This document shows, piece by piece, positions 32,710 to 58,355 of a stretch of DNA of 64,000 nt. Below the pieces are notes generated by a model. It did not search any database, had not been told where the DNA came from, and saw nothing but the letters and a program-made list of their open reading frames with translations. Numbering within the stretch: the first letter of the stretch is position 1; every line of letters starts with the position of its first letter. The DNA lies in the IMG/VR virus record IMGVR_UViG_3300042895_001344, positions 124,001 to 188,000 of that record. One strand, 5' to 3'. Both the position numbers and the translations under genes were made by a program.

Positions 32710-34131
32710 TTAGTGTAATCTTTCTATTGAAATAAAGTTATTAAGATAAGTGTCACCGATTATCAAAATAATTCTATATACTCTATTGTTTGTATCATCT
32801 CTTAAAATGTAGGTAGATGTATCACCTTGTCCAGTAAAGTTCCAATTAAACATTGATGCAGTTGCGGTTGTTGATAATGAAGTTGAACTAACACTTCCCG
32901 ATGAAGAACCTCCAAAAGCTTGATAATGTGCCGAAATAAATCCTGTAACAGTATCAGATACTGTTGCGACACTCAACCCCCTATTACCGCTTGATGTTAG
33001 AGTTGCTTTAATATTATCTAATGTTACAAATGTTCCAGCATTTACTATTCCACTTGATTTACACGTCAATTCACCACTAACGCCGGCGGGTGACTTACTT
33101 AAATCAAGATATACACCTCTTGCACCTCCACCTTGTTCAAAAATTCTTAATCTATTTTGATAAGAATCAATTGTAATTCCACTACCTGTAAGTGAGTTGT
33201 TTGTTTGTGATTTTGCTAATAAAATTTCTCCACCTTCATCACCACTTCCAGTTCCAATTTGTAATGCAGTTGTTATTATATTCATTGAACCACTTATTAT
33301 TACCGAACCTGTAATATTTTGAGTTGTTGAAATTGAACCTGTTGTAATTAAACCCGTATAACTAACAACTCCACTAGTTCCTGATGAACCATTAGAACCC
33401 GATGTTCCACTACTACCATTAGAACCTGATGTACCACTTGTACCTGACCAACCATTTATTTGGGTTACCATCATAAAACACTGATTTGTGCTAAACCCAC
33501 CAGTTGAATTACTAAAAGTACTTCTTAGGGCTACTTGTGTCGTTCCTGTTGTGACAATAATTGCCTCCGCCAATGGTTGCCAAGCTGCAGGAGCGACACT
33601 ATTAACAACTATTACACCTGCTAGATTTCCTATTAAAGTATTACTTGTGGTTACATTTATCCATTGATATTGTGTTTCAGCATTGTTTATATTATTTGCC
33701 AATGCAAAACTAGCATTAAGTTTATATGTCTTATTTGCTGCTAAGGTTATAATACCCGTAGATTGATTATAAGATACCGAACCATTTGATATTGTGGTAC
33801 CCGATAATATAAAATTATTTCCCGTTGATGGTATGGTTGCAGTTGATGGTGTAAAATATAACCAATCATTGTCTACGTAACCTGATGTTCCCGATGACCC
33901 TGAACTACCGTTTGAACCTGACGAACCCGAAGAACCGTTAGACCCCGATGTTCCCGATGAACCGGCAGTTCCTGAAGAACCTAAATCAAGAAATGGTTGA
34001 CTTGATACCAAATCTTCAATTGATATGCGATTTGATGTGTACCCACTACCGCTGGTTGAGGATATCATTAATATATCATCAATTTTTACGGAACCCGTAC
34101 TAGTTAATTCTGAAACTTTTATTAGTGCCAT
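32710..34131 (-). CDS. Tail fibre-like protein with collagen-like Gly-Ser/Thr repeats
   Basis: Two (G-S/T-S/N)n tracts; N-terminal MALIKVSEL motif similar to 27344..29623. Confidence 0.65.
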   Translation of the reverse strand: MALIKVSELTSTGSVKIDDILMISSTSGSGYTSNRISIEDLVSSQPFLDLGSSGTAGSSGTSGSNGSSGSSGSNGSSGSSGTSGYVDNDWLYFTPSTATIPSTGNNFILSGTTISNGSVSYNQSTGIITLAANKTYKLNASFALANNINNAETQYQWINVTTSNTLIGNLAGVIVVNSVAPAAWQPLAEAIIVTTGTTQVALRSTFSNSTGGFSTNQCFMMVTQINGWSGTSGTSGSNGSSGTSGSNGSSGTSGVVSYTGLITTGSISTTQNITGSVIISGSMNIITTALQIGTGSGDEGGEILLAKSQTNNSLTGSGITIDSYQNRLRIFEQGGGARGVYLDLSKSPAGVSGELTCKSSGIVNAGTFVTLDNIKATLTSSGNRGLSVATVSDTVTGFISAHYQAFGGSSSGSVSSTSLSTTATASMFNWNFTGQGDTSTYILRDDTNNRVYRIILIIGDTYLNNFISIERLH

Positions 34132-34155
34132 TTTTATTTATATTTTTATAATTTT

Positions 34156-34479
34156 TTATTCAGGTATTAGTATGTTTCCATTTTCATCTGAAATTATGTA
34201 AACACCGTTTTCGGTTATTATACCAAACTCATTCGGAGTTGGACTTGGTGTATTTGTTATTGTAGGAGTTGGTGTAGGTGTAATTGTTGGAGTGGCAGTT
34301 GGTGGAACAGGGGTAGATGTTGGCGTTGGTGTTGGTGTATCTGTTGGTACCGGTGTTGGTGTACTTGTAGCTGGTAAAGGTGTATCGGTAATTGACGGCG
34401 TCGGCGTAGGTGTCCCCGTTGGTGGGGATGTTTGGTTTTTTGGGACTAAAATGAATTTACCGTTTATCTGCCAAGACAT
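34156..34479 (-). CDS. Small Pro/Thr-linker protein
   Basis: Mostly (PT)n; C-terminal [18 protein letters not shown] resembles the LLQENG motif of 29689..32667. Confidence 0.65.
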
Positions 34480-34504: not shown

Positions 34505-36232
34505 TTATATTGGTGTAGGGGTTGGAGTTGGTAAAGTATTCTGATCTACGAATCCAAAACAAACCGTACAATAGTTTTCTGTTTCAGTGTAATTAAAACT
34601 TACGCTACTTACCGTACCATCTATACGGATAATATTAAACCCTTCAATTCCTGTAAATTGAGTATATTGAGTTCCATTTACTGGGTTTTGGTATGTTGTA
34701 TCTAGTTCCCAAATTGGTGTGAATGGTGCGGAAACGATAACCGGAACGGATGTAATTGAATTACCCACACTAGCAAAGGCAATCAAAGGATTTGTAACTG
34801 GTTGACTAAATGTTGCGGTAAACACACCCATCGATGTATTTCGTATTTGAGTTCCACTAACCGGAACATTATATTCTTGAGGGAACGTTGTACCCTCATA
34901 CATACCTGAACTCTGTATTCCCATACCACCTACACTTTGTGTAACTGCAATAGTAATACCATTTTGACCTATACCTGATGCGGTTGAATCGGTAACTGAG
35001 TTAATAGTCATCCATTGAAATCCTAAACTTACAGGTGTTGCTGTAGGTGTAACAGTTGGCGTAGGAGTTGGACTTGGTGTCGATGTAGGAACCGGAGTTG
35101 GTGAAGGTGTTACTGTTGGTGTTGCCGTTGGTGGAACATATGCTCTCACGTCATCAACACAAGGTGCATTACATATTTCAAAAGTATATCCTGTTAATGT
35201 TCTAAAATTATGTTTAACGTGAATAAAATCTAATGGTTCTTCATAATATAATGCCGATTTAATATTAAACCCACATGTTTTTGATGTATTACCAAAATAA
35301 GTGTAGTTATATCCTCCACCCCAAGATTGTATTAAAGTTTGTTCGTCTCTATATGACGGTATAATCTCTTCCCAATTAGTTTCGGTATAAATTAAATTAC
35401 CATTTAAATAAAACTTTAAATCACCCAATCTCATATCTCTTTGTTCCGCCCATTTTTTATTTAATTCTTCAACATACTCAGTTGTAATTGTACCACCCGT
35501 AACCCAATCTTCTATTGTATTGGTAATTGTGTATCCTGTTGTGATTTGTGTTGATGTCATTGCGGTGACACCTGTTAATGGTTTAATAAATTCTACCGCA
35601 TGTGGACCTCTAATTAAATTGTTAAATCCACCCACATTATCCAAATCACAATCTGTAAATTCTTTATATCTATTAAAAACTATCGTTAAATTAAAATCAC
35701 TCGTATTTCCTGTTACACATAATACAGGTGTTTGACCATTTAAAAGACTATGTGTCTCAGTATAACCCGTAGTATTACAATAACCTGAATAATGATATGA
35801 AACCCACTTTACCCTACCATCATTTGTAAATTGAAATGATAAGTTATTATCCAAATAATTTGTATATGTAGTATCACCATCAACCCCGATATAGTAAAAA
35901 ATCGTACCTCCAGACCAATTTACTGAGTTTCTATTGAATACAAAATCCAACGTCCAACCCTTTTCTGTTCTTCTTCTAACCGTAAAATCACAGGTATCTC
36001 CCGTGTAACGACTAGCAACCGGAACAACCCATGGTTTCTGATCGTTTAAAGGTGTGGTTAAACAACTTGAGTCAATTGTAAGAGCACTATATGTGATTGG
36101 GGTAGTTAAATCTAACACATCTGTATCGTAATCAACCTCATTTGTGGTTAATTGATAGTCATAAAGTTCCGATGAATCTAACTTCAAATCCAATTTAGAT
36201 CCGTAATAGTTTAAAATATTCTGTCTATTCAT
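34505..36232 (-). CDS. Virion structural protein with PT linker and variable C-terminal domain
   Basis: Beta-rich N-terminal part, PT linker, second domain. Start moved to MNRQ (36232) because TATTTATA (36238-36245) falls between the two ATGs. Confidence 0.65.
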   Translation of the reverse strand: MNRQNILNYYGSKLDLKLDSSELYDYQLTTNEVDYDTDVLDLTTPITYSALTIDSSCLTTPLNDQKPWVVPVASRYTGDTCDFTVRRRTEKGWTLDFVFNRNSVNWSGGTIFYYIGVDGDTTYTNYLDNNLSFQFTNDGRVKWVSYHYSGYCNTTGYTETHSLLNGQTPVLCVTGNTSDFNLTIVFNRYKEFTDCDLDNVGGFNNLIRGPHAVEFIKPLTGVTAMTSTQITTGYTITNTIEDWVTGGTITTEYVEELNKKWAEQRDMRLGDLKFYLNGNLIYTETNWEEIIPSYRDEQTLIQSWGGGYNYTYFGNTSKTCGFNIKSALYYEEPLDFIHVKHNFRTLTGYTFEICNAPCVDDVRAYVPPTATPTVTPSPTPVPTSTPSPTPTPTVTPTATPVSLGFQWMTINSVTDSTASGIGQNGITIAVTQSVGGMGIQSSGMYEGTTFPQEYNVPVSGTQIRNTSMGVFTATFSQPVTNPLIAFASVGNSITSVPVIVSAPFTPIWELDTTYQNPVNGTQYTQFTGIEGFNIIRIDGTVSSVSFNYTETENYCTVCFGFVDQNTLPTPTPTPI

Positions 36233-36237
36233 TATAA

Positions 36238-36270
36238 TATAAATATCTTTCATAACATTTGATATTTATA
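36238..36270. promoter_or_regulatory. Back-to-back divergent late motifs
   Basis: TATTTATA on minus (36238-36245) and on plus (36263-36270). Confidence 0.75.
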
Positions 36271-36285
36271 TAAAAGTCTATTTAG

Positions 36286-37035
36286 ATGAATAATTTTATA
36301 AAACAGGTAATTGAGGAGAAATTTGCTTCAAAAGCACAACAAAGGTTCTTCTACGCTAAGGCGAATGAAAAGGGTAAACCCAAGAAAGAAAAGAAGAAAT
36401 GGTCTAAATGGGCTAAGGAGTTCTCCGATAAAACAGATTATGATGAAATCCCCGATAAAGTAGAGAAAGAGGAAGAAGTAGATGAAATCGTGGACGGTGC
36501 CGGTAATTTTGCTAAAAGTAAAAAACCAACTAACTCAAGAGCTGAAGTAACATCAAATTCAACAACTGATGAATTTGTATTAACAGGAGCGGGTCAATCG
36601 TCTATATCACCAAAATTAGGTATGGGTTTTAGAAGATATTGGGGTGAGTCTGATATGAGTAAAGCATTAGGTGCTGAAGATACAATTATGGATGATGCTA
36701 ATTATGAAGAAGCTAAAAAGAAATTTATTGAGTTGGGTGTAACTGACCCAAAGGAATTGGAAGATAGATTAGGACAAATGGGATATGATCCAAAATTACC
36801 AGACGATAAGGTGAGATTGGTAGAAAACCCTAAAAAATTCATGGAAGAATACATAGATAATCTTTTAAAACAAAAAGGAAAAGATAATGATGTATTACCC
36901 AAAGAAGAAGAGGTTGAGGAGATTGAAATCAATCCAATAGTTGTAAAACAAATAAAATCACTTAAAAATAGTATGAAAACTTATGGTCTTAAACCAGACC
37001 ATATTTTGAAAGGACTTAAAGACGATAATGAATAA
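36286..37035 (+). CDS. Late hypothetical (probable head-associated) protein
   Basis: VIEE followed by KFASKAQQRFFYA basic module; late motif at 36263-36270. Confidence 0.7.
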   Translation: MNNFIKQVIEEKFASKAQQRFFYAKANEKGKPKKEKKKWSKWAKEFSDKTDYDEIPDKVEKEEEVDEIVDGAGNFAKSKKPTNSRAEVTSNSTTDEFVLTGAGQSSISPKLGMGFRRYWGESDMSKALGAEDTIMDDANYEEAKKKFIELGVTDPKELEDRLGQMGYDPKLPDDKVRLVENPKKFMEEYIDNLLKQKGKDNDVLPKEEEVEEIEINPIVVKQIKSLKNSMKTYGLKPDHILKGLKDDNE

Positions 37036-37519
37036 AGAGTTAAAAAATAGGGACTTTGATTTACCACAGAACATTTTAGATAAGATCAACCACACGGTTA
37101 CAGGTCTTAACGGTCAAAATGTGCATGGGGTAATGAGAGCAAAAAAACTTTTAACCGATAAAAAAGTAACATATGGTCAACTTAAACGTATTATTCATGA
37201 CATACAAGGTATGGATAAAGTTGCTGATAAAATTAGGTATGACTTGGCTGGTGGTGATTTAATGGATACGTGGTCAAAACAATATCTTCAGGGTGAGAGA
37301 GATTTAATTCAAAATAGAAAAGAAGGTAGAAAACAGGCTGATGATATTTCAAGTACAACGGGAGAAAGAAAAAATAGTTTCTTAACGAAACATACAAAAA
37401 AATCAAGTTGGTTACCGTCATTTAAATTTAATTCTAATTCAGAAAAAAATTCAGTGGCGTCAATAAAATTAACAGGTTTATTTGAACAAGTTAATAGAAT
37501 AAAAAAATTAATGTTATAA
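37028..37519 (+). CDS. Late hypothetical protein with C-terminal LFEQVNRIKKLML tag
   Basis: Overlaps the previous gene; tag shared with 38213..38962 and 52324..53085. Confidence 0.7.
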   Translation: MNKELKNRDFDLPQNILDKINHTVTGLNGQNVHGVMRAKKLLTDKKVTYGQLKRIIHDIQGMDKVADKIRYDLAGGDLMDTWSKQYLQGERDLIQNRKEGRKQADDISSTTGERKNSFLTKHTKKSSWLPSFKFNSNSEKNSVASIKLTGLFEQVNRIKKLML

Positions 37520-37520
37520 T

Positions 37521-38213
37521 ATGGCAACAAAATTAGATCAAATATCAGAACAGTTTAGAAAAGAATCTATTACAAGAAATTCTTATAACGAAAAGAATTT
37601 ATATAATAGTCAAAATATTAATGCATTATCTAACGGAGATGAAAAAGGTAAAGGTCAAATTGGTGACAGCGATAAAATCGGTTCAACCACTGACATTCAA
37701 AATAGAATTTCAAGTTTAGGTAGAAACACTTACAATGAAAATAATCAATATAGTTTAACTAATCCAAATGCATTAGCAGATGGAGATGAAAAAGGAAGAG
37801 GTCAAAAAGAAGATAATGTTGCAATTGGAACATCTGTAGATATTGCAAATAGAAATTTATTATTAAGTAAAAACACATATAAATTAAATAATAAATATGG
37901 TGTTAACAATCCTAATGCAATGTCCGACGGTGATGAAAAAGGTAAGGGACAAAAAGGTGAAACAGGTGAGGTTGGTTCAAGAACTGACGTGTTAAAAAGA
38001 ACTGAAAATTTAGTAAAAAATAAGTTTAATAAAAAGAATTTATATAATAGTACAAATCCTGATGCAATTTCTGACGGAGATGAAAATGGTAAAGGACCTA
38101 AAGATGAAAATGGAACTGTTGGTTCTAAAACTGATATTTTAAAAAGAACCGAAAATACTGGTAAGAATAGTTATAACTCTAAAAAAGAATATAATAGACA
38201 TCCAACAGAATAA
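37521..38213 (+). CDS. Tandem-repeat protein (four 49-aa units plus a partial fifth)
   Basis: NPNAxSDGDEKGKG core; GGA/GGT-GAT-GAA starts at 37635, 37782, 37929, 38076 (147-nt period). Confidence 0.85.
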   Translation: MATKLDQISEQFRKESITRNSYNEKNLYNSQNINALSNGDEKGKGQIGDSDKIGSTTDIQNRISSLGRNTYNENNQYSLTNPNALADGDEKGRGQKEDNVAIGTSVDIANRNLLLSKNTYKLNNKYGVNNPNAMSDGDEKGKGQKGETGEVGSRTDVLKRTENLVKNKFNKKNLYNSTNPDAISDGDENGKGPKDENGTVGSKTDILKRTENTGKNSYNSKKEYNRHPTE

Positions 38214-38962
38214 TGAGTTTTACAAATACAATCTTCAAAATACTTGAAGAACAAAATATTTTAAGGACATCAAAAACTAAACCTATAGTTGATTCAATCA
38301 AAAATAGGAATAAGATTTCTTTTTTTTATACTGGTCCAAGAAAACCTGCAAAAGATAGTGTTAAACCTGGTAAAAGAATTGATGCCGAAGCAGTGGCTTT
38401 AGGGTTAAGTAAAAGAGGTAATTTAGTTATTCGTGCATATGTCCAACCACCTTCAGTATCCAAAAAAGGATTTGATAAAACAGGTTGGAGAACTTTTATG
38501 GTTAGTAGAATGAGTGATTTAAGAATTAGCGATGAAAAATTTGATCAGAAGAGACCCGACTATAAAGAAGGTGATGATAAATCAATGAGTGTTACTTACG
38601 TAACAACAGATTGGACAAATAAACCTGAGGTTAAGAAACCAAGGATTGTTAAACCAAAACCAAGTGTCCCTTCGGCAACTGCAACAACTCAATCAACTCC
38701 AAGTGTTGACCCGACAACAACAACTACACCTGAGGAACCAAAAACAACAGAACTACCACAACCAAAAACTCAAACTAAACCTGAGAAAGTTGTACCAAAA
38801 CCTGAACCAACAAAAACAGAACCTGAAACAACAGAACCTAAAACACAAGAATTACCTCAACCAAAACAAACAGAAAAACCAGTTGCAAATCCTGAAGAGG
38901 ATGAGGAAAATAAAAATTTACAAGAAAGTATTAAAAATATTAAGCGTTTAATGTTTTCTTAA
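38213..38962 (+). CDS. Stand-alone WYL-domain protein with Pro/Thr/Glu/Lys linker and C-terminal LQESIKNIKRLM tag
   Basis: SIKNRNKISFFY...R..E..ALG......IRAY...GWRTFMVSRM fits the WYL fold; no HTH. Confidence 0.7.
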   Translation: MSFTNTIFKILEEQNILRTSKTKPIVDSIKNRNKISFFYTGPRKPAKDSVKPGKRIDAEAVALGLSKRGNLVIRAYVQPPSVSKKGFDKTGWRTFMVSRMSDLRISDEKFDQKRPDYKEGDDKSMSVTYVTTDWTNKPEVKKPRIVKPKPSVPSATATTQSTPSVDPTTTTTPEEPKTTELPQPKTQTKPEKVVPKPEPTKTEPETTEPKTQELPQPKQTEKPVANPEEDEENKNLQESIKNIKRLMFS

Positions 38963-38995: not shown

Positions 38996-39565
38996 ATGTC
39001 ACAACAAGGATCAATATCATCTAACGATTTAATGAAAAAGTTAGTACAAGCAAAAAAAGTAATGAATAAAGTTGATGGTGGAAATTATGAAAGAGGTCAT
39101 GTTAATAGTGAAATGTTAAGATCTGATCCTTCAGAATTAATGGAAATGCAAACACCTCAACAACCTAATACAAGACCTGTGGGTGGTAATATGAGTATTG
39201 ATAAAATACAAAATTCAAAATTACCTGACGCAATTAAAAAAGCAATGATGGAAAACCCAATTCAACAAATTTCTTTAAATGATACTTTAGATATGGATTT
39301 CGTTAAAGGAGCAAAACGTTTAATGGAACAAGAAGGTGTTGCAACAAGACCGTCGGCACAACCAAAACAAACTATTGTTAATAATAATATTGACATGAAC
39401 GCAATCGCAGTTCTTATTGAAAATACAGTTCGTAAAGTAATGGATGAAAAATTAAATCAAATCCTTACAGCATCCACAACATCATCTATTAATGAAAATT
39501 TAGTACTGAAGGTGGGAGACTCTATTTTCAAGGGTAAAATTACAGGAGTAAATAAAGCCAAGTAA
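38996..39565 (+). CDS. Late hypothetical protein
   Basis: 189-aa ORF; TATTTATT at 38985-38992. Confidence 0.7.
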   Translation: MSQQGSISSNDLMKKLVQAKKVMNKVDGGNYERGHVNSEMLRSDPSELMEMQTPQQPNTRPVGGNMSIDKIQNSKLPDAIKKAMMENPIQQISLNDTLDMDFVKGAKRLMEQEGVATRPSAQPKQTIVNNNIDMNAIAVLIENTVRKVMDEKLNQILTASTTSSINENLVLKVGDSIFKGKITGVNKAK

Positions 39566-41953: not shown

Positions 41954-41961
41954 TATTTATA
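41954..41961 (+). promoter_or_regulatory. Late motif TATTTATA
   Basis: Upstream of phoH. Confidence 0.7.
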
Positions 41962-44680: not shown

Positions 44681-45460
44681 ATGAAAAATATAACAGTAAT
44701 TTTACCTGTACATAGACTAGATGGCATTTATAAAGAAATGTTAGATAATTCGATTAAATCAGTTGAACAATTTCATAATGATGTTAACTTATCAATAGTA
44801 TGTCCACCATCATTAAAAACAGAATTAGTAAATTTATCTGAAGTTTTAGAAATTGAAGTTATTTCTAACAATGGTAAAACTGATTTTTGTTCTCAAGTAA
44901 ATTTGGGAATTGAAAAATGTAAAACTGAATGGTTTAGTATTTTAGAAATTGATGATGAGTATAAATCAATTTGGTTAAAATCAACAAACGAATATGTTAA
45001 AACATATACCGATGTTGATGTATTTTTACCTGTAGTTAAGGATATTAATGTTGATGGAAATTTTGTAAGTTTTACAAATGAATCAACTTGGGCATATGGG
45101 TTTACTGAAAAACAAGGTATATTGGATAATGAAGTTTTATTAGATTTTCAAAACTATCAAATTAGTGGTGGACTTTATAAAACACAAGTTATTAAAGATA
45201 ATGGTTCATTAAAAGAAAATATCAAGTTAACATTTGGTTATGAGTTTTTATTAAGATTAACACATAACAATATTAAGGTTATGACCGTACCAAGAGTAGG
45301 ATATCAACACTTAAACTTTAGAGAGGATTCGTTATTTTGGTCATATAAAAACGATGAAACTAATAAGATTAGTGAAGATGAGGCTAAGTTTTGGTTGGAG
45401 ACGGCAAAGAAGGAATTTTTCTTTAAAAATAAACGAGATGTAAATTATGAAATAGCTTAA
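44681..45460 (+). CDS. Glycosyltransferase family 2 (GT-A)
   Basis: ITVILPVH, FCSQVNLGIE, WFSILEIDDEY (DxD-like), YEFLLRL. Confidence 0.8.
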   Translation: MKNITVILPVHRLDGIYKEMLDNSIKSVEQFHNDVNLSIVCPPSLKTELVNLSEVLEIEVISNNGKTDFCSQVNLGIEKCKTEWFSILEIDDEYKSIWLKSTNEYVKTYTDVDVFLPVVKDINVDGNFVSFTNESTWAYGFTEKQGILDNEVLLDFQNYQISGGLYKTQVIKDNGSLKENIKLTFGYEFLLRLTHNNIKVMTVPRVGYQHLNFREDSLFWSYKNDETNKISEDEAKFWLETAKKEFFFKNKRDVNYEIA

Positions 45461-46161
45461 TGCCAAGACCAAGAACCCAAAAAATATATTTTGGGGAGGA
45501 TCAAGAGAAGGCGGTAGTCAATTACTTAGAAAGTACTGATGAAGCAGAAAAAAATAAGATATTCAATGAATATTTACGTGAACCCCTAATTATAATGGTC
45601 GAATCAATTATTCGACGTTATAAACTTTATAGAAAAGATATGGAATTTGAAGAGATTCATACAGACACCATGTCCTTTCTTATAACAAAGATCAACAAGT
45701 TTGATCATACCAAGAATACCAAAGCATATTCTTATTTTGGTACCATCTGTAAAAACTACCTTATGGGTGCAATACAGAAGGATACAAAGGAACAAAACAG
45801 ACAAGTATCGTATGATGATATATCCTCAGATTTTGAAGATAGTAAAGACCTTTCATATGTAATTGACGAATTCGTAGTTGATTACGCATCTGTAATTGTA
45901 AAACTTACCGTGGATTTAGAAAATTTTGTGGAAAAGGAAAAAAACCTATCTGATAATGAAAGAAAACTGGGTTATGCATTATTAGAAATTTTTGGAAACT
46001 TCGATAAGATATTTCAAGTAGGAGATGGTAATAAATTCAATAAGAACCTCATTTTACTCTCTTTAAGAGAAATGACCTCATTATCAACAAAAGAGATTAG
46101 AGTCTCCCTAAAACGTTACAAGAAATTATATGACGGTATTTTGGGTGGGTTTTTAGAATAA
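45460..46161 (+). CDS. Phage late sigma factor (T4 gp55-like)
   Basis: IYF...KAVVNY...MVESII...KINKFD...KAYSYFGTICKNY matches the gp55/sigma region-2 pattern. Confidence 0.7.
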   Translation: MPRPRTQKIYFGEDQEKAVVNYLESTDEAEKNKIFNEYLREPLIIMVESIIRRYKLYRKDMEFEEIHTDTMSFLITKINKFDHTKNTKAYSYFGTICKNYLMGAIQKDTKEQNRQVSYDDISSDFEDSKDLSYVIDEFVVDYASVIVKLTVDLENFVEKEKNLSDNERKLGYALLEIFGNFDKIFQVGDGNKFNKNLILLSLREMTSLSTKEIRVSLKRYKKLYDGILGGFLE

Positions 46162-51669: not shown

Positions 51670-52323
51670 ATGAAAGTAATTAAACTAAAAGAAAACGATC
51701 TTAGAAAATATATTGCTAAGATTATAAAGGAAAATCAATCAACCGAAAACTATATGTTTTTCAGTAATTTACAACAAATACATAGACAATGTGAGATGTT
51801 GATGAAAATGGATCCACAAGAGTTAGATCAAATTATTAAAAACGGTCACGATTGGGCGGACGATCATGTATCTGAAGCTAAGAACAATATGGATCAAGTT
51901 TTTGATTTCTTTATGAATGAAACTAAAAGTAAAGATAAACAAGATGTTACTGCCGATATGGATCAGTTTAGTATGAACGAAGAAGGACAACTTGACGAAA
52001 AATGTTGGGATGGGTATAAACAAGTTGGTAGTAAGAAAAAAGGTGGAAAAATGGTACCGAATTGTGTACCTGTAAGTGAAGCAAGTAGTCCTGCACAACA
52101 AGCTGCAATTGCAATCAATATGAAGAAAAAGGGTGTTGAACCTAAAAATGAGTCATACGGTGAAATAGACGAAAGTAAGAACTGTCCAACAGACCCTGCG
52201 AAGTGGGCAGCATCAAAGGCTAAAGCTAAATCTAAATTTGACGTCTATCCTTCAGCATATGCAAATGGATTCGCGGCGAAAGATTATAAAGCAAAAGGTG
52301 GTGGTTGGAGAAAATGTAAATAG
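51670..52323 (+). CDS. Modular basic protein (probable internal head protein)
   Basis: Leader MKVIKLKENDLRKYIAKIIKE; modules KCWDGYKQVG...PNCVP, SSPAQQAAIAI, CPTDPAKW...GGGW, each starting after xxE. Confidence 0.65.
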   Translation: MKVIKLKENDLRKYIAKIIKENQSTENYMFFSNLQQIHRQCEMLMKMDPQELDQIIKNGHDWADDHVSEAKNNMDQVFDFFMNETKSKDKQDVTADMDQFSMNEEGQLDEKCWDGYKQVGSKKKGGKMVPNCVPVSEASSPAQQAAIAINMKKKGVEPKNESYGEIDESKNCPTDPAKWAASKAKAKSKFDVYPSAYANGFAAKDYKAKGGGWRKCK

Positions 52324-53085
52324 ATGAATTTAGAAGAGAACATACAAAGAATTAAACAAATGATGATTTCTGAGGAGATGGTACAATCTGATGCTTGGAA
52401 GTCTTTAAAGAAGACATTAGATGTTCTTAAAAAGAAGAAAAAAGTTTTACTATTAAGTTGTTCTAATAGACACAATTGGGACGAAAATGATATTGATATA
52501 CCAAAATCTAAAATGATTGCGATGTATCTTAACGAAGAATTAGGTGACAAATCCGTTTTAATAGATGTACCTGAACTTAAGATATTTCCTTGTGAAGGTA
52601 ACGTATCAAGAAAAGACGGAGATTCATGTGGAGTATTAAAATCTAAACTTGAAGACAAGGACAAAAATCCTTCAGGTCATCATAGATGTTGGGCAAGTAT
52701 AAACAACAAATCAGATGAACTTTGGAAAATATCTAAAGAACTATTTGAATCGGACGCGGTTATATTTTTTAGTTCAATAAGGTGGGGACAGACAAATATG
52801 TATTATCAAAATCTAATTGAAAGACTTAATTGGATTGAAAATAGACATACAACACAAAATGAATCAAACATAGTAAAAGATATTGAATCTGGATATATTT
52901 GTACGGGACATAATTGGAATGGAAGTAACGTTGTTGATCTACAAAAACAAGTTCATTCATTTTATGGATTCAAACCAAACGATGATATATATTGGAATTG
53001 GCAGTATACTAAAGATATTAACGACGAAAGTCAAAAATCATATAAAGATTCTCATGATAAATTCATAAAAGACACTAAATTATAA
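52324..53085 (+). CDS. Flavodoxin-fold NAD(P)H-dependent FMN reductase / iron-sulfur flavoprotein-like protein with N-terminal tag
   Basis: LLLSCSNR, PCEG...SCG...RCW, ESDAVIFFSSIRWG...QNLIERL; extra leader MNLEENIQRIKQMM. Confidence 0.75.
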   Translation: MNLEENIQRIKQMMISEEMVQSDAWKSLKKTLDVLKKKKKVLLLSCSNRHNWDENDIDIPKSKMIAMYLNEELGDKSVLIDVPELKIFPCEGNVSRKDGDSCGVLKSKLEDKDKNPSGHHRCWASINNKSDELWKISKELFESDAVIFFSSIRWGQTNMYYQNLIERLNWIENRHTTQNESNIVKDIESGYICTGHNWNGSNVVDLQKQVHSFYGFKPNDDIYWNWQYTKDINDESQKSYKDSHDKFIKDTKL

Positions 53086-53366: not shown

Positions 53367-54119
53367 ATGAAAATTATTGTTTCAAAGGAAGATAAAGAAT
53401 ATATAAACGAATGTCTTAAATCAGGTGAGGTTTTAAAAGAAGATCTTACAAGGTGGTTTAAAGAGAAGTGGGTAGATGTTAGTAAAAAGGTAGATGGTAA
53501 ACACCCACCTTGTGGTAGAAAAGATGCTGATGGTAAATCGTATCCTAAATGTAGACCTTCTAAAAAAGTGTCTAAAGAAACTCCAAAAGTTGCCTCTTCA
53601 TATGATAAAAAAGAAAAGAAAGCAATGACTTCACAAAAAAGAAGAGCAGAAAAGAAAGACCCTAAAGTGGGTAAGGGTAATAAACCAACAATGACTAAAT
53701 TTGATGAGAATATGGAAAAGAGAACAATAATTCAAATATCTGAAGATCAATTCGAAAGACTATTTGAATACAACGAAGAAACTCCTGTATTGATATATGA
53801 GGATGAGTTTGGATCAATAGAAAATACTAAATTTGAATACGACTTAGGTCTTTTAAATGAGGCTGAGTATCAAGGACGTAAAGTTCAACTTGGTAAAATC
53901 ATGCAAGGGGACGTAAAGAAATCAAAAGTTTATGTTAAGAACGATAAAGGTAAAGTCGTTAAAGTAAACTTTGGTTTTGGTGGTAAATCCGCTAAAGGTA
54001 AACGAATGGTTATTAAGAAAAATAACCCTGCAAGACGTAAATCATTTAGAGCACGTATGAATTGTGATAATCCAGGTCCTCGTTGGAAACCAAGATATTG
54101 GGCTTGTAGAACTTGGTAA
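53367..54119 (+). CDS. Modular basic protein (probable internal head protein)
   Basis: LKE then DLTRWFKEKWVD...PCGR...YPKCRP module; LNE then AEYQGRKV...RRKSFRARMNC...RYWACRTW module. Confidence 0.7.
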   Translation: MKIIVSKEDKEYINECLKSGEVLKEDLTRWFKEKWVDVSKKVDGKHPPCGRKDADGKSYPKCRPSKKVSKETPKVASSYDKKEKKAMTSQKRRAEKKDPKVGKGNKPTMTKFDENMEKRTIIQISEDQFERLFEYNEETPVLIYEDEFGSIENTKFEYDLGLLNEAEYQGRKVQLGKIMQGDVKKSKVYVKNDKGKVVKVNFGFGGKSAKGKRMVIKKNNPARRKSFRARMNCDNPGPRWKPRYWACRTW

Positions 54120-54503: not shown

Positions 54504-56261
54504 TTATCTTAATGTATCTAAACCAAACACTTGGATACCTTGTACATCGATTACACCGAAGTAACGGTTGTTCACCATTTTCTTTGCGTAACGTGTCATG
54601 ATACCTTTGATTGGAGTCATGTTGAATGGATTGTACATTGTAGGAGTTAATTGTAATGGCACATATGGTGCGTATACATAACCTGCATCTAACAATGATT
54701 TTCCTTTATGACCGATCAAGATTTTGTTAGCTGGGAAGTAAGGATCACGATACACTTGGTAACGACCACCTACTGTACCGATTTTCTCGATACCCATGTT
54801 ATATTGATCTTGTTCTGGTTCTGCGTTAGAAACGTGGAAATACTCTAAATCATCGAATACTGCAGAAACTTCTGAAGAAACAACGATCCAGTTAGCACCA
54901 CCTCTTAACGTAGTTTTGTGGATTTGAGCAGAAATTTGGTTGATTTTTGTAACCAAAGTTTGGTTCCAATCTTTTTGAGTGTAACCTTGTAAAGTTGAGT
55001 TTCCAGATCCACCGTATTTCCATCCATTGTAATCCCATTTAGCTTTCCATGCTGCACCTTTACGTAAGTCACGTAAGATTTCACGGTCAACCTCAGCAGC
55101 GATTTGCTCTGATAATAAAGCTGTCAATTCAGCTTCAGCGTCGATGTTGTGGAACGCACTAACATCTTGTGCTAATTCTGGAGACCAGCTAGCTCTTAAT
55201 TTTCTTTCAGTTACAGAAACTGTTACTGATTCTAAATCAAAAGATACTTCACCAATTTGATCTTCAAACTCCAAAGTATCGTACTTGCGATAAGAAGCGT
55301 TGAATTCTGTTCTTGCTAAAGTTGAACCTGTTACTTCGTAATCAGAAAAACCCGAAGTTGGGTCGTATTTTTGTAAATCTACTTGTACATAGATTTTACC
55401 GTCAGTATCACAAATATCGTAGAAATTTTGTGTTGCGTTAGTTGTTTTAGCACCGTATTCTACAATACCTTTACCGTACTTTTGAGTAACGATATTGATT
55501 GGTAATGAAGTACCTGTAGTTGCACCTAAGAAAGCTAATAAGTTAGCATCTGAAGTGAAAACTTGTAATGAAGCTAAGAATTCTTCAGAATCCATTTCAT
55601 TACCGTCTGGTCCTTTCAATTTACCTGCACCTGCAGATTCAAATCCTTCTAATTCTAAAATTACATAAGATTTAGTTGTACCGGTATTAATAGCAGATGT
55701 ACTTGTAGTAACTTCACCGTTAGAGAAAGTTGTGAAACCATTTACAGTTAATGCGCTAACAGAATAAGCACCTTTTGAATAATCAAAAAGACCTTGTTCT
55801 AAGTCGTCATTAGCTTCGTAGAAACGATCGTAAAGATTCTTAGCACCTGTATTATAACCTGCTGTTGCAGCGTCAGAGTTACCTGGCATACCGTAAGGAG
55901 AGTAATGACCGTTAGCGTCAGTTCTCTCTTGGATTTTAGGTACGAAGAAGAACAATTTACCGATTGGTAAGTTCATAGCTTGTACAGACACGATGTCGTT
56001 AGCTAATAATTTAGAGAATACACGACGAATGATAGGGAAAACTACAGTCTCGAAAGAACCAGACGCATCAGCTACTGCTGCTTCGTTGATTAAGTAAGAC
56101 GCTTGGTTTTCATACAATTGCGCGATGTTATCTTTTTGGTGACCACCAAGACCCTCTAAGAATCCTAATTCGTCCCATTTTTTAATGGTATCTTCTTTGA
56201 TAACTCTAAGGTGCTTAAGACCTATGTTACCAACCATACCGCTTTCTAATAATGCTCCCAT
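54504..56261 (-). CDS. gp23: Major capsid protein (T4 gp23-like)
   Basis: IVSVQAMNLPIG, ERKLRASWSPELAQD, AEAELTALLSEQIAAEVDREIL, DAGYVYAPYVPL, KGIMTRYA. Confidence 0.97.
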   Translation of the reverse strand: MGALLESGMVGNIGLKHLRVIKEDTIKKWDELGFLEGLGGHQKDNIAQLYENQASYLINEAAVADASGSFETVVFPIIRRVFSKLLANDIVSVQAMNLPIGKLFFFVPKIQERTDANGHYSPYGMPGNSDAATAGYNTGAKNLYDRFYEANDDLEQGLFDYSKGAYSVSALTVNGFTTFSNGEVTTSTSAINTGTTKSYVILELEGFESAGAGKLKGPDGNEMDSEEFLASLQVFTSDANLLAFLGATTGTSLPINIVTQKYGKGIVEYGAKTTNATQNFYDICDTDGKIYVQVDLQKYDPTSGFSDYEVTGSTLARTEFNASYRKYDTLEFEDQIGEVSFDLESVTVSVTERKLRASWSPELAQDVSAFHNIDAEAELTALLSEQIAAEVDREILRDLRKGAAWKAKWDYNGWKYGGSGNSTLQGYTQKDWNQTLVTKINQISAQIHKTTLRGGANWIVVSSEVSAVFDDLEYFHVSNAEPEQDQYNMGIEKIGTVGGRYQVYRDPYFPANKILIGHKGKSLLDAGYVYAPYVPLQLTPTMYNPFNMTPIKGIMTRYAKKMVNNRYFGVIDVQGIQVFGLDTLR

Positions 56262-56283: not shown

Positions 56284-57582
56284 TTATTTTATTTTTCTCA
56301 TCATTTCTTTAATTCTACTGAATTGAGGATTTTCATAAGCTTTTGACTCAGATAATACCTCTGTAGAAGAAGATGTTGATGGAGTGTTAGAGATTTTTTT
56401 CGCAACTGATTCGGTAACCGTAGTTTTTGAACCTAATTCAGTTTTGATTGTTGAGAATAAAGACTTAGCTTCATTCATAGTAGAAACTGTATCAAATCTC
56501 TTTAATATATTCAATTTCTCTTGTTTTGTAGTTGAATGTTCAGTAAACAAACGTGTAGCGTAAGCTAAGTTTGCATTGAATACTGCAACTTCATTTAGTT
56601 TATCCTTGAATAATACTAACGCCTTTTTATATTCAGCATTTTGTTTTTTCAATGTTTCAACTTGTTCGTTGATACCTGAACCCGCTTTGTACATTTTTTT
56701 AGATGGTAAACCAGCTCTTTTCATACCGTTCTTGTTTCCATGAGGGTTTGATTTTGTACGTGCAGCTTCTGTAGCTTCAACTTTTTTAGGTTCTTCAACC
56801 TCGTCTTCCTCGTCTAATTCGATTTCATAGATAGTTTCTTCGTCAGCTTCTAATTCGTCTTCAGCATCAACATCTTCCATATCGGTTTCTGTATCAACAT
56901 CAGATTCTAAATCAGAATCAACGTCTGTATCCATTCCACTCATATCAACGTCGGAATCAACGTCAGAATCAACATCTGTATCTAAGTCAGCTCCCATGTC
57001 CATTCCAGTATCAAGATCAGAATCTTCACTATCTAATTTGATAATGTATTCATTTTCTCCGTCACCGAATTCGACATTGTTACCGTCTTTTTTAACTACA
57101 ATACCATCTTCTGGTTTCATAGCCTTGAATACTTTAAGAACTTCATCGTCTGAAGCACCTGTCATATCCATAACGTCTTCATCATCCATTGAACCTTCGT
57201 CACTCATAGATTCCATATCAGTACCCATATCGGTACCCATGTCATCCATGTCAACATCAGTGTCAACATCCGAATCAACGTCATCTGTTGAGTCTAAGTT
57301 ATCGAGGTCTGTATCTGTATCAACATCTGTATCAACGTCTTCTTCAGATTCATCATCTGTGTCTTCGTCGTCAGCTGTTACATCTTGTTCTGCCTCTTCT
57401 TCAGGTTTAGCAACTTCTTCATCAGTTGTTGTTTCTTCCTCTTCTTCCAATGATTCTTTTAGCAAATCTTTAAGTTCTTCCTTCATTGTTGAAGCAAGTA
57501 TACCTTTTGCATTTTGCTTTACGGCCTCTTCAAGATTTTGTACTTGAAGTAACGCTTGTTCTAAAATTGATTTTTCGCTCAT
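56284..57582 (-). CDS. Prohead core scaffold protein with long acidic linker
   Basis: Between protease and MCP; helical ends, Asp-rich repeats, LNEVAVFNANL motif, many LxE sites. Confidence 0.8.
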   Translation of the reverse strand: MSEKSILEQALLQVQNLEEAVKQNAKGILASTMKEELKDLLKESLEEEEETTTDEEVAKPEEEAEQDVTADDEDTDDESEEDVDTDVDTDTDLDNLDSTDDVDSDVDTDVDMDDMGTDMGTDMESMSDEGSMDDEDVMDMTGASDDEVLKVFKAMKPEDGIVVKKDGNNVEFGDGENEYIIKLDSEDSDLDTGMDMGADLDTDVDSDVDSDVDMSGMDTDVDSDLESDVDTETDMEDVDAEDELEADEETIYEIELDEEDEVEEPKKVEATEAARTKSNPHGNKNGMKRAGLPSKKMYKAGSGINEQVETLKKQNAEYKKALVLFKDKLNEVAVFNANLAYATRLFTEHSTTKQEKLNILKRFDTVSTMNEAKSLFSTIKTELGSKTTVTESVAKKISNTPSTSSSTEVLSESKAYENPQFSRIKEMMRKIK

Positions 57583-57671: not shown

Positions 57672-58355
57672 TTATTTAGATAGAAATGTATCTAAATTGC
57701 CCATAAGTTTAGACATTCTACTGTCAAGTGTTGGTTTCTTAATTTCCGCTTCTTGATATTGGTCTCTTTCTGATGGGTCTTTAAAAATATAAGCACCGGG
57801 AGTTGATGGTGATGATACTAAATCAAAACAAACTAATTCGAAATCATCTTGTACGATGTTTTCTCCTTTAACTTGTTTAAGTGATCCTACACCACGTGAA
57901 GAGATACCTAAAGTTGCCCCGTTCATTAATAACATCGCAGCTTGATCTCCTTTGGTTGAAACGATACCCATCTTCTTCCATCCAGGAGAAGTGAATAACT
58001 TGATTTTACCCATAAGGATTCTACCGTCCCACCAAGTTTCTAAAATTGAATGTGATACTCGATCTAAATCGATTAGTGAAGATGAAGGGTGATTTAATTC
58101 ATTTAATGCTCCACCCTTTTTAATTAGTGATTGATATTTTTCGTTTTCTCTCTTAAGTAACATTTCAGGATATATCCTTCCGTTCTTATTTGGAGTATCG
58201 AATTTTTGTAAAACAGCATAAAGGATTAGATCTTCAGAGAAGTCCACACCCTTCATTTCCTGTATAATTTTTTTATTCTCTTCTGGAGATACGTGTCCTG
58301 CGTCGTATTCTATTAAAATTCCTGTTCCAAGTTCTTTGGGTCCTAATATCTTCAT
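57672..58355 (-). CDS. gp21: Prohead maturation protease (gp21-like)
   Basis: PNKNGRIYP, ELNHP (His), LGISSRGVGS (Ser), FDLVSSPSTPGA. Confidence 0.95.
   Translation of the reverse strand: MKILGPKELGTGILIEYDAGHVSPEENKKIIQEMKGVDFSEDLILYAVLQKFDTPNKNGRIYPEMLLKRENEKYQSLIKKGGALNELNHPSSSLIDLDRVSHSILETWWDGRILMGKIKLFTSPGWKKMGIVSTKGDQAAMLLMNGATLGISSRGVGSLKQVKGENIVQDDFELVCFDLVSSPSTPGAYIFKDPSERDQYQEAEIKKPTLDSRMSKLMGNLDTFLSK

What the first reader, a model, noticed from the sequence alone, without database searches (positions are those of the whole stretch)
38213..38962. HTH-less WYL domain on a flexible stalk with a cargo tag
Seen: WYL domain (about aa 18-112), a roughly 110-aa Pro/Thr/Glu/Lys linker, a C-terminal LQESIKNIKRLM tag and an N-terminal ILEE site, in a late operon. 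Known: WYL domains sense ssDNA or nucleic-acid fragments and regulate defence and damage responses (BrxR, CapW, DriD, PafBC). Inference: a virion-delivered ligand sponge or decoy that dampens WYL-controlled defence, or an ssDNA-end-binding ejection protein.
Basis: partly seen in the sequence, partly recalled or inferred. Interest (0 to 1): 0.6.

Follow-up and report, generated by a model that had tools for sequence, protein, structure and literature searches.

The report
Capsid-tagged WYL protein of jumbo phage
A late gene of an uncultured freshwater giant phage encodes a nucleic-acid-sensing WYL domain with no DNA-reading HTH, joined by a floppy linker to a short end-helix that the phage also puts on unrelated proteins and, in core form, on its head scaffold and head protease, so the protein is probably loaded into the capsid and delivered with the DNA.

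Summary
ORF 38213-38962 (+, 249 aa) has three parts. Residues ~3-135 are a confident WYL/Sm-like barrel (AF2 pLDDT 91.7; Z 7.7-10 to PafBC, BrxR, DriD, CapW) with no HTH and no WCX. Residues ~141-228 are a disordered, length-variable Pro/Thr/Glu/Lys linker (about 88 aa, not 110). Residues 229-248 are a near-invariant terminal helix. The arginines that contact ssDNA in PafBC and CapW are the best-conserved positions.

The tail is a portable tag, L-x-E-x-Φ-x-R-I-K-x-L-M. A model built only from WYL-family tails picks out two unrelated proteins of this phage: ORF 37028 (C-terminus) and ORF 52324 (N-terminus). Its 6-residue core also ends the T4-type prohead protease and the putative scaffold. That core match is not significant alone, but it is terminal and conserved in relatives. 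The tag is flanked by (L/I)-x-E, the T4 gp21 cleavage consensus. The operon follows a TATTTATA motif shared with portal, protease, terminase and sheath genes.

Best reading: a prohead-targeted internal (ejection) protein that binds ssDNA, analogous to T4 internal proteins. The decoy/sponge function is untested. The single complex prediction gave no answer. This is a new variant of known kinds.

The parts
36263..36270 (+). TATTTATA promoter-like motif, 15 nt before the ATG of the operon's first gene
   Evidence: The 8-mer is about 17-fold enriched upstream of genes. Of 63 genome copies, 33 lie just upstream of a same-strand start, including the portal, prohead protease, large terminase and tail sheath genes.
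36286..37035 (+). First gene of the unit: 249-aa Lys/Glu-rich protein of unknown function, without the tag
   Evidence: Its position is conserved in all related loci.
37028..37519 (+). 163-aa protein built like the target (small domain, Ser/Asn/Lys linker, same tag). The tag LFEQVNRIKKLML is encoded at 37478-37516
   Evidence: The tag HMM built from WYL-family tails only scores 9.7 bits here, above all 20 shuffled proteomes. The 8-mer PSSM was reached by 0 of 200 shuffles. The tail is conserved in its own family of 654 proteins and in every related locus that includes this gene.
37521..38213 (+). 230-aa protein of tandem ~45-aa repeats (N.YN..N...SDGDEKGKGQ), without the tag
   Evidence: The homologous slot varies in size (114-364 aa) among relatives.
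38213..38632 (+). Target gene, residues 1-140: HTH-less WYL domain (helices 3-16 and 22-31, five-stranded barrel, extra strand 127-131); basic, pI 9.9
   Evidence: AF2 pLDDT 91.7. VIA Z 7.7-10.0 to PafBC, BrxR, DriD and CapW. 73 of 98 homologs hit PF13280. PADLOC WYL E 0.005. Conservation: R55 96/98, R74 91/98, R/K93 98/98, R/K99 80/98.
38633..38896 (+). Target gene, residues 141-228: disordered Pro/Thr/Glu/Lys linker with two conserved ELPQPK boxes and an acidic NPEEDEE stretch at its end
   Evidence: 72% P/T/E/K. No secondary structure and pLDDT 45-61. Length varies among homologs.
38897..38959 (+). Target gene, residues 229-249: terminal amphipathic helix carrying the tag LQESIKNIKRLM (residues 236-247, encoded at 38918-38953)
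   Evidence: Helix 229-248. E238 and K244 are invariant, and L236 and L246 nearly invariant, in 39 diverse full-length homologs.
38996..39565 (+). 189-aa protein of unknown function, the conserved next gene of the unit
   Evidence: 67% identical homolog in the divergent genome G003.
52324..53085 (+). 253-aa FMN-reductase-like protein with the same tag at its N-terminus (LEENIQRIKQMM, residues 3-14, encoded at 52330-52365), followed by I-S-E
   Evidence: Tag HMM 9.7 bits. 8-mer PSSM reached by 0 of 200 shuffles. The tag is conserved in the homolog of a divergent genome. The FMN_red assignment is a lead only.
56284..57582 (-). 432-aa highly acidic protein in the T4 gp22 (scaffold) position, ending ...FSRIKEMMRKIK (core encoded at 56299-56316)
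   Evidence: Gene order is terminase, portal, two small ORFs, protease, this ORF, MCP. The core ranks 5th among the C-terminal zones of 219 proteins. Relatives read RMKDLM, which scores 14.8, like true tags. The Mel-JY01 protein in the same position ends ...ERMKKLAGIVK.
57672..58355 (-). Prohead protease of the T4 gp21 family, ending ...DSRMSKLMGNLDTFLSK (core encoded at 57702-57719)
   Evidence: Pfam Peptidase_S77 E 1.7e-21 and phrog_207. The core ranks 3rd among C-terminal zones. Relatives mostly read RMKKLM, which scores 18.0.
54504..56261 (-). Major capsid protein (Gp23 family), the candidate receptor of the tag (untested)
   Evidence: Pfam Gp23 E 9e-73. N-terminal ~110 aa are almost invariant among relatives. 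The complex prediction with the tail gave no answer.

Best explanation
The gene encodes a late-made, prohead-targeted internal (ejection-type) protein.

Its N-terminal 135 residues are a basic, stand-alone WYL domain that keeps the ssDNA-binding arginines of bacterial WYL sensors but has no output domain (no HTH, no WCX). An ~88-residue disordered Pro/Thr/Glu/Lys tether connects it to a 12-residue amphipathic helix, L-x-E-x-Φ-x-R-I-K-x-L-M.

That helix is a portable address label. The phage lineage places it at the C- or N-terminus of otherwise unrelated proteins, and its core R-(I/M)-K-x-(L/M)-M also ends the prohead protease and the scaffold-position protein.

Inferred mechanism. During head assembly the helix docks the protein onto the same site of the prohead core or shell that the scaffold and protease use. 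The T4-type protease may then cut at the flanking (L/I)-x-E and free the WYL domain inside the head. The domain lies with the packaged DNA and enters the cell with it. There it can bind single-stranded DNA or DNA ends at the very start of infection.

Shown here: the fold, the predicted disorder, the conservation and sharing of the tag, the promoter motif and the protease family. Inferred: docking, cleavage, packaging, ejection and ligand binding.
For: Fold and ligand site:
- AF2 pLDDT 91.7. The 14 best PDB entries are WYL domains at Z 7.7-10.0.
- 73 of 98 homologs hit PF13280.
- The HMM alignment to PafBC puts R55, R93 and R99 at PafB R181, R208 and R214, and R74 at CapW R168. These residues are essential for ssDNA binding (PMC11804915, PMC11662680) and are the most conserved columns of the family.

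Architecture:
- Disordered linker and terminal helix.

Tag:
- An HMM and a PSSM trained on WYL-family tails only single out ORF 37028 (C-terminus) and ORF 52324 (N-terminus) of 219 proteins, above all shuffled proteomes.
- 7 of the 9 best non-self core hits are terminal (P = 6e-7). The protease ranks 3rd and the scaffold 5th among C-terminal zones. The relatives' RMKKLM and RMKDLM score like true tags (tails).
- Microcystis phage Mel-JY01's scaffold-position protein ends ERMKKL....
- The tag is kept on both the WYL and the 163-aa proteins in all related loci down to 48% domain identity.
- A divergent genome carries it on further proteins at either terminus.
- All N-terminal copies are followed by (L/I)-x-E, and the C-terminal copies begin with it.

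Protease and timing:
- Protease is Peptidase_S77, E 1.7e-21.
- TATTTATA promoter motif is shared with head and tail genes.

Precedent:
- The T4 CTS targets diverse internal proteins to the prohead core and is cut off by gp21. T4 gp21 and Alt also have C-terminal propeptides (PMC9026906, PMC3012670).
Against: - There are no proteomic data, and no cultured relative carries the gene.
- The similarity to the protease and scaffold tails is only a 6-residue core. In this genome's own sequences it ranks 6th and 9th of 69,207 positions, which is not significant on its own. My first regex for it was partly post hoc.
- The MCP-plus-tail complex prediction gave no answer.
- Downstream genes of the same unit are not structural (glycosyltransferase, dUTPase), and one tagged protein looks like an enzyme.
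- A more distant phage keeps the WYL gene in the same slot without linker or tag, so the domain's job does not strictly need the tag.
- (L/I)-x-E is a common tripeptide, and L and E may simply be part of the helix.
Confidence: 0.5

Rival explanations
1. Cytoplasmic late protein. The shared helix is a docking or oligomerisation peptide for a hub that is not the capsid (for example a late-transcription, replication or packaging factor). The WYL domain senses ssDNA produced during replication or packaging and brings that hub to it. On this reading the protein is never packaged.
For: Neighbouring genes of the same unit are non-structural (glycosyltransferase, dUTPase). One tagged protein looks like an FMN reductase. 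The full 12-residue tag is not found on the protease or scaffold, only its core. The MCP complex job gave no support (which is not evidence either way).
Against: The core motif is conserved at the extreme C-termini of exactly the two prohead-core proteins and is terminal in 7 of the 9 best hits. The tag is flanked by the protease consensus. The promoter motif is shared with head genes.
Confidence: 0.2
2. Capsid-wall tether. The tag stays bound to the inner face of the shell in the mature head, and the basic WYL domain on its long linker grips the packaged DNA. It would organise or anchor the genome rather than being ejected or acting in the host.
For: The domain is basic (pI 9.9) and the tether is long and extended. 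The tag's core is shared with the scaffold. The ELPQPK boxes in the linker are conserved.
Against: WYL domains bind ssDNA, not duplex DNA, in all solved cases (PMC11662680, PMC11804915). A cleavage consensus sits directly at the start of the tag. The tail-less homolog in a distant phage could not be tethered this way.
Confidence: 0.12
3. Membrane anchor. The terminal basic amphipathic helix is a membrane-targeting sequence of the MinD/FtsA kind (my own knowledge of those systems). It would hold the WYL domain, and the other tagged proteins, at the inner membrane where T4-type proheads start to assemble.
For: The layout is a short basic amphipathic helix at a terminus behind a flexible linker. 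It works at either terminus.
Against: Residue-specific conservation (invariant E238 and K244, R-I-K core) goes far beyond what membrane helices need. Membrane helices keep a pattern, not a sequence.
Confidence: 0.07
4. SSB-like replication or recombination mediator. The layout (nucleic-acid-binding fold, disordered linker, acidic/hydrophobic tip that recruits partner enzymes) resembles bacterial SSB or T7 gp2.5, with two proteins sharing one tip (comparison from my own knowledge).
For: The three-part layout and the acidic NPEEDEE stretch before the tip. The ssDNA-contact arginines are conserved.
Against: The phage has its own gp32-type SSB (PF08804 E 7.4e-15). The gene lies behind the structural-gene promoter motif. 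The tip also occurs N-terminally on an enzyme-like protein.
Confidence: 0.05

Closest known systems
T4 internal proteins (IPI, IPII, IPIII) and Alt with their capsid targeting sequence (CTS); C-terminal propeptides of T4 gp21 and Alt (PMC9026906, PMC3012670)
   Same: A short terminal peptide is the only thing shared by otherwise unrelated proteins of one phage. It sits next to an (L/I)-x-E site. The phage has a gp21-family (S77) protease, a Gp23-family capsid protein and T4 head-gene order. The cargo set differs between related phages. The proteins are small and basic.
   Different: The peptide has a different sequence and is 12 residues long, not 10. It occurs at either terminus (mostly C-terminal here). 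Its core is also found on the scaffold and protease. The cargo is a WYL domain on an ~88-residue disordered tether. No virion or processing data exist.
Shared C-terminus of protease and scaffold that binds the major capsid protein (lambda C/Nu3, herpesvirus UL26/UL26.5; 80alpha scaffold and SaPI1 CpmB).
   Same: The protease and scaffold end in the same short helix, and further proteins that need access to the procapsid interior copy it.
   Different: Here the protease and scaffold are separate, non-nested genes that share only a 6-8-residue core. The receptor is unknown.
wHTH-WYL-WCX regulators: CapW, BrxR, DriD, PafBC
   Same: The WYL barrel is the same (Z 7.7-10). Arginines are conserved at the positions that contact ssDNA.
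   Different: There is no wHTH and no WCX dimerisation domain. The W-Y-L triplet is replaced by L-V-I. The protein is phage-encoded, behind a structural-gene (late-type) promoter motif, with a linker and tag instead of an output domain. It cannot be a transcription factor of that type.
Stand-alone phage WYL-domain proteins (for example the BFVD entry 'WYL domain containing protein, uncultured Caudovirales phage', and the 97-140-aa members of this family)
   Same: The same domain occurs without an HTH in phage genomes. One sits in the same operon slot in a distant relative.
   Different: They lack the linker and the tag. No function is known for them.
SSB-type proteins (bacterial SSB, T7 gp2.5). 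Comparison from my own knowledge.
   Same: The layout is a binding fold, a disordered linker and a conserved terminal peptide preceded by acidic residues.
   Different: The fold is an Sm-like barrel, not an OB fold. The phage already has gp32. The promoter motif is the one shared with structural (late) genes.

Membership tests
WYL domain (Pfam PF13280) | Sm-like five-stranded beta-barrel preceded by a helix, superposable on solved WYL domains | tested here: met
   AF2 pLDDT 91.7. VIA Z 10.0 PafBC, 9.6 BrxR, 9.4 DriD, 8.9 CapW, above the Sm/Hfq tier at Z 6-7. Foldseek's top 24 are all WYL.
WYL domain (Pfam PF13280) | Sequence match to the family profile above the curated cut-off | tested here: inconclusive
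   The query scores 14.4 bits against a 21.8 cut-off. PADLOC WYL models give E 0.005 over residues 22-115. 73 of 98 homologs hit PF13280 at E <= 0.01, best 2.6e-8.
WYL domain (Pfam PF13280) | Trp-Tyr-Leu triplet on the third strand | tested here: not met
   The aligned triplet is L71-V72-I73, and family columns are hydrophobic but not W/Y. The triplet is variable in accepted members too (WHV in CapW; PMC11662680).
WYL domain (Pfam PF13280) | Conserved arginines of the ligand (ssDNA) face | tested here: met
   R55 (PafB R181), R74 (CapW R168), R93 (PafB R208) and R99 (PafB R214) by HMM alignment. Conserved in 96, 91, 98 (R/K) and 80 (R/K) of 98 homologs. P0001 has M96 at PafB R211, where 34 of 98 homologs have R.
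WYL domain (Pfam PF13280) | Binds ssDNA or another nucleic-acid ligand | not testable with these tools
   This needs EMSA or fluorescence anisotropy with the purified domain.
wHTH-WYL-WCX transcription regulators (CapW, BrxR, DriD, PafBC) | N-terminal winged helix-turn-helix DNA-binding domain | tested here: not met
   Only two short helices (3-16, 22-31) precede the barrel. There is no HTH family hit.
wHTH-WYL-WCX transcription regulators (CapW, BrxR, DriD, PafBC) | C-terminal WCX dimerisation domain that closes the ssDNA tunnel | tested here: not met
   After residue ~135 the chain is a disordered linker plus one helix.
CTS-bearing internal head proteins of T4-type phages | Short terminal peptide shared by otherwise unrelated proteins of the same phage | tested here: met
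   The tag HMM/PSSM finds ORF 37028 and ORF 52324 above all shuffles. Further carriers are in G003, and one more is in this genome.
CTS-bearing internal head proteins of T4-type phages | Phage encodes a gp21-family prohead protease, and the peptide is flanked by its (L/I)-x-E consensus | tested here: met
   Peptidase_S77 E 1.7e-21. C-terminal tags begin L/I-x-E, and all five N-terminal tags are followed by (L/I)-x-E. Cleavage itself was not tested.
CTS-bearing internal head proteins of T4-type phages | N-terminal 10-residue CTS similar to that of T4 IPIII | tested here: not met
   The tag has a different sequence and is C-terminal here. The N-terminal helix ending in ILE-E only loosely recalls the T4 CTS (a comparison from memory).
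CTS-bearing internal head proteins of T4-type phages | Found, in processed form, in purified heads and delivered into the host | not testable with these tools
   No cultured relative carries the gene. The library holds no paper linking WYL to virion proteins.
SSB / gp32 single-strand binding proteins | OB fold, or membership of the SSB or gp32 family | tested here: not met
   The fold is WYL/Sm. The phage's gp32 homolog is a different gene, at G000 121949-122479. There is no PF00436 match in the genome.

The most novel reading that the evidence does not exclude
The WYL domain is an injected decoy. Packed into the head through the tag, it enters with the DNA and soaks up the first single-stranded DNA fragments or ends. 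Host WYL repressors of the BrxR/CapW type then never see the ssDNA signal that derepresses BREX, CBASS and similar defences. That signal was shown to act during restricted infection in PMC13622015. It would be the first virion-delivered mimic of a host immune sensor domain. The either-terminus tag would be a new, engineerable capsid-loading signal.
Probability: 0.15. Interest if true: 0.85.

Novelty: new variant of a known kind. Interest (0 to 1): 0.6.

Why it matters
WYL domains are known as the ssDNA-sensing switches of bacterial defence and damage regulators. Here the bare sensor domain is encoded by a widespread lineage of uncultured lake giant phages: about 1,000 relatives, on contigs up to 335 kb. 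It is attached to what looks like a capsid address label.

If the protein is packaged, phages of this lineage deliver a sensor-domain look-alike at the first moment of infection. That would make the idea of counter-defence by signal sequestration directly testable.

Independently of the WYL domain, the tag is of interest in itself. It is a 12-residue helix that appears at either terminus of unrelated proteins, and its core ends the scaffold and the protease. It would extend the T4 capsid-targeting principle to a distant branch of the T4 superfamily. It could also serve as a cargo-loading signal for phage engineering.

Tried and rejected
1. Complex prediction of the MCP (585 aa) with the last 45 residues of the target returned "no answer" (score 0.00). 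It counts neither for nor against binding. The alignments were shallow.
2. tblastn of the target against 50,697 phage records found no match. Stand-alone homologs gave one hit, in a 636-kb uncultured phage.
3. A profile search of PDB sequences found nothing useful except a weak PafBC row (E 2.2). I used that row only for residue equivalences.
4. I considered the idea that the protein replaces an SSB and rejected it, because the phage has a gp32 homolog.
5. My first regex for the core motif (3 hits, all C-terminal) was partly fitted after seeing the sequences. I replaced it with an HMM and PSSMs trained on WYL-family tails only. These confirm ORF 37028 and ORF 52324 strongly, and the protease and scaffold only through position, rank among C-termini and conservation in relatives.
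6. Co-variation of the last two hydrophobic residues between the WYL and 163-aa tails (LL with LL in 9 of 10, LI with LI in 6 of 8) is suggestive but confounded by shared descent, so I do not use it as evidence.
7. Atlas feature search gave nothing for ORF 37028. Pfam and PHROGs gave nothing for the 415-aa and 428-aa proteins with tag-like ends.
8. Lake metatranscriptome libraries hold short contigs 90-99% like the operon, including the target gene. Contigs show neither starts nor timing, and DNA carry-over is possible.
9. In early family scans my minus-strand references were shifted by one codon (start codon dropped, stop codon included). This did not affect the hits, and exact ranges were used from then on.
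10. The search for related loci with the 98-sequence alignment failed for lack of a conserved stretch. A tighter alignment worked.
Full report
WHAT IS THERE

The window is part of a single 217,142-bp viral contig with 31.6% GC. CheckV rates it about 65% complete, and relatives reach 335 kb. It is a myovirus of the wider T4 superfamily:
- Gp23-family major capsid protein and Peptidase_S77 prohead protease.
- Portal, large terminase, tail sheath, tube and baseplate hub.
- gp32-type SSB.
- A gp55-like sigma factor.

It is far from any cultured phage. Its DNA polymerase is 24% identical to Salinibacter phages. Its MCP is 38% identical to Microcystis phage Mel-JY01. RNA and DNA libraries that hold related sequence are from lakes and other fresh water.

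The ORF named in the finding is exactly at 38213-38962 (+) and is 249 aa.

THE DOMAIN

On its own, the query gives only a sub-threshold Pfam WYL hit (E 0.039, 14.4 bits against 21.8) and PADLOC WYL hits at E 0.005 over residues 22-115.

The family is large. There are about 1,000 word-search relatives and 169 clusters at 50% identity in the exhaustive search with residues 1-144. Of 98 diverse members, 73 hit PF13280 individually, best 2.6e-8.

With that alignment AlphaFold2 gives a confident model (pLDDT 91.7, pTM 0.82): helices 3-17 and 22-30, a five-stranded barrel, and an extra strand at 127-131.
- Foldseek's first 24 PDB matches are all WYL proteins.
- VIA-align gives Z 10.0 for PafBC, 9.6 for BrxR, 9.4 for DriD and 8.9 for CapW. 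Generic Sm/Hfq proteins follow at Z 6-7.

So the fold is WYL. There is no HTH before it and no WCX domain after it, so it cannot be a regulator of the CapW/BrxR/DriD/PafBC type.

The weak HMM alignment to PafBC agrees with the structural superpositions. It places L71-V72-I73 at the W-Y-L triplet. It places R55, R93 and R99 at PafB R181, R208 and R214, and R74 at CapW R168. All of these are needed for ssDNA binding (PMC11804915, PMC11662680). They are among the best-conserved columns of the family: R55 96/98, R74 91/98, R/K93 98/98, R/K99 80/98. The domain is basic, with pI 9.9. Nucleic-acid binding, most likely to ssDNA, is therefore a reasonable inference, not a result.

LINKER AND TAIL

Residues 141-228 are 72% Pro/Thr/Glu/Lys. 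They vary in length among homologs and keep two ELPQPK boxes. In the full-length model they have no secondary structure and pLDDT 45-61. Residues 229-248 form a helix.

The tail is nearly invariant. E238 and K244 are invariant, and L236 and L246 nearly so, in 39 full-length homologs whose domains are only 39-90% identical. The consensus is L-x-E-x-Φ-x-R-I-K-x-L-M.

THE TAIL IS A SHARED, PORTABLE TAG

The gene two places upstream (37028-37519, 163 aa) has the same build: a small domain, a Ser/Asn/Lys linker, and a tail LFEQVNRIKKLML. That tail is conserved in its own family of 654 proteins.

To avoid circularity I trained an HMM and position matrices on WYL-family tails only and scanned all 219 proteins of the genome.
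- The best non-self hits are the C-terminus of ORF 37028 and the N-terminus of ORF 52324-53085 (MN-LEENIQRIKQMM-ISEE), at 9.7 bits each.
- That is above the best score of 20 shuffled proteomes.
- With the 8-residue matrix, 0 of 200 shuffles reached them.

ORF 52324 is probably an FMN-reductase-type enzyme (a lead only). Its tag is conserved in a divergent genome.

In 78 related loci, down to 48% domain identity, the WYL protein always has the tail. So does the ~163-aa protein wherever its gene is on the locus.

A whole divergent genome (G003, 251 kb) carries the tag on further proteins: N-terminally on 159-, 259- and 342-aa proteins, and C-terminally on a 513-aa protein. The 415-aa homolog of that 513-aa protein in our genome (G000 76162-77409) ends ...INEEVEKMKKMF... 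and also sits behind a TATTTATA motif.

A more distant phage keeps the operon and the WYL gene in the same slot, but without linker or tag. The tag is therefore a modular addition.

LINK TO THE HEAD

The prohead protease (57672-58355, Peptidase_S77 E 1.7e-21) ends ...DSRMSKLMGNLDTFLSK. The acidic 432-aa protein in the gp22 (scaffold) position ends ...FSRIKEMMRKIK.

This link rests on the 6-residue core only.
- In a whole-proteome scan these two rank 6th and 9th of 69,207 positions, which is not significant by itself.
- 7 of the 9 best non-self core hits lie within 12 residues of a terminus, where 8% is expected (P = 6e-7).
- Among C-terminal zones the protease is 3rd and the scaffold 5th of 219 proteins.
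- In relatives the usual forms are RMKKLM (protease) and RMKDLM (scaffold). They score 18.0 and 14.8, as high as true tags.
- The scaffold-position protein of the cultured Microcystis phage Mel-JY01 ends ...NVVERMKKLAGIVK.

T4-type proteases cut after (L/I)-x-E (PMC9026906). The C-terminal tags begin with L/I-x-E, and all five N-terminal tags are followed within a few residues by (L/I)-x-E. In T4 a 10-residue N-terminal CTS is the only feature shared by diverse internal proteins. It targets them to the prohead core and is removed by gp21. T4 gp21 and Alt also have C-terminal propeptides, which the authors suggest serve targeting (PMC9026906, PMC3012670).

The present system looks like the same principle with a different peptide.

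TIMING

The 8-mer TATTTATA is about 17-fold enriched upstream of genes. Of 63 copies, 33 lie mostly 3-37 nt (a few up to 96 nt) before a same-strand start. These include the portal, protease, terminase and sheath genes and several very large ORFs. It is the reverse complement of T4's late promoter TATAAATA (the T4 sequence is from my own knowledge).

One copy lies at 36263-36270, 15 nt before the first gene of the unit. The next + strand copy is at 41954. No + strand terminator-like site lies between them, and sigma-70-like sites are not enriched. The four genes from 36286 to 38962 abut or overlap. The order 249-163-230-WYL-189-glycosyltransferase-78-dUTPase-PhoH is conserved.

"Late operon" is thus supported by sequence, not by expression data. 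Lake metatranscriptome libraries hold short contigs of the operon, but these show neither starts nor timing.

MOST LIKELY MECHANISM AND RIVALS

I put about 0.5 on this reading: a late, prohead-targeted internal protein. Its tag docks where the scaffold and protease dock. The tag may be clipped by the S77 protease. The basic WYL domain travels with the DNA into the cell and binds ssDNA or DNA ends there.

Rivals:
- A cytoplasmic late protein whose tag recruits a non-capsid hub (0.2).
- A protein that stays tethered to the inner capsid wall and organises the DNA (0.12).
- A membrane-targeting helix (0.07).
- An SSB-like mediator (0.05), weakened by the gp32 gene.

Nothing here tests it. I give it about 0.15. 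The one complex prediction (MCP with the tail) returned no answer.

NOVELTY

Stand-alone phage WYL proteins exist as unannotated database entries. Capsid-targeting peptides are known from T4. The following were not found in the phage records or in the paper library searched:
- The combination of a WYL domain, a disordered tether and a terminal tag.
- A tag that occurs at either terminus.
- A tag whose core is shared with the scaffold and protease.

I file this as a new variant of known kinds.

Noticed in passing
whole genome; in the window e.g. 17909, 21923, 29645, 32675, 36263, 41954, 50214, 51658, 57610, 58372, 61692, 63526: TATTTATA (sense strand) is a strong candidate late promoter. There are 63 copies, and 33 of them lie mostly 3-37 nt before a gene start, so the leaders are very short. 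It is the reverse complement of T4's TATAAATA. A gp55-like sigma gene lies at 45460-46161.
   Followed up: partly
window 36230-36253 (minus strand; start of ORF 34505-36253): A TATTTATA copy (36238-36245 on the minus strand) lies inside the longest ORF, 5 nt upstream of its second Met. The real start of this 582-aa Pro/Thr-linker protein is probably the ATG at 36230-36232, and the divergent intergenic region is then wider than 32 bp.
   Followed up: no
window 54504-56261 (-): The Gp23-family capsid protein is 585 aa. Its first ~110 residues are almost invariant among phages whose overall identity is 76-80%, and residues ~110-330 are a highly variable insertion absent from T4-like MCPs.
   Followed up: partly
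window 56284-57582 (-): The scaffold-position protein has a ~200-residue run of acidic D-x-D repeats (DVDSDVDTD...), then a helical region, a Ser/Thr linker and the RIKEMM end. It has the same domain-linker-peptide layout as the tagged cargo proteins.
   Followed up: partly
window 37521-38213 (+): A 230-aa protein made of four to five ~45-aa repeats (N.YN..N...SDGDEKGKGQ). The homologous slot ranges from 114 to 364 aa in relatives, and most end in ...YPDF.
   Followed up: no
window 52324-53085 (+): An FMN-reductase/flavodoxin-like protein (Atlas lead, score 0.91-0.96) carrying the tag at its N-terminus. It may be a packaged enzyme.
   Followed up: partly
G000 76162-77409 (-), outside the window; also G000 33027-34313 (-): A 415-aa protein ends ...INEEVEKMKKMFKYNEKTQ (tag-like), sits behind a TATTTATA motif, and has a homolog in G003 that also carries the tag. 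A 428-aa protein ends ...NKIKNLI (weaker match). Neither has a family hit.
   Followed up: partly
window 51670-52323 and 53367-54119 (+): Two DUF5872-related proteins (the match of 51670-52323 is sub-threshold, E 0.067) flank the tagged enzyme-like gene. They have Cys/Trp-rich basic C-termini (...GGGWRKCK and ...PRYWACRTW).
   Followed up: no
L172 (Logan contig, 22 kb) 4558-7037: A more distant phage keeps the five-gene operon next to the glycosyltransferase and dUTPase. Its WYL protein is 135 aa with no linker or tag, and its 161-aa protein also lacks the tag. Its N-terminus, MKLYNIFEQLILE, loosely recalls the T4 CTS (a comparison from memory).
   Followed up: partly
L175 (Microcystis phage Mel-JY01, PP395634.1) 4140-4367: The cultured relative has a ribosomal protein S21 (RpsU) gene inside its head-gene module, between the protease and the scaffold-position gene.
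   Followed up: no
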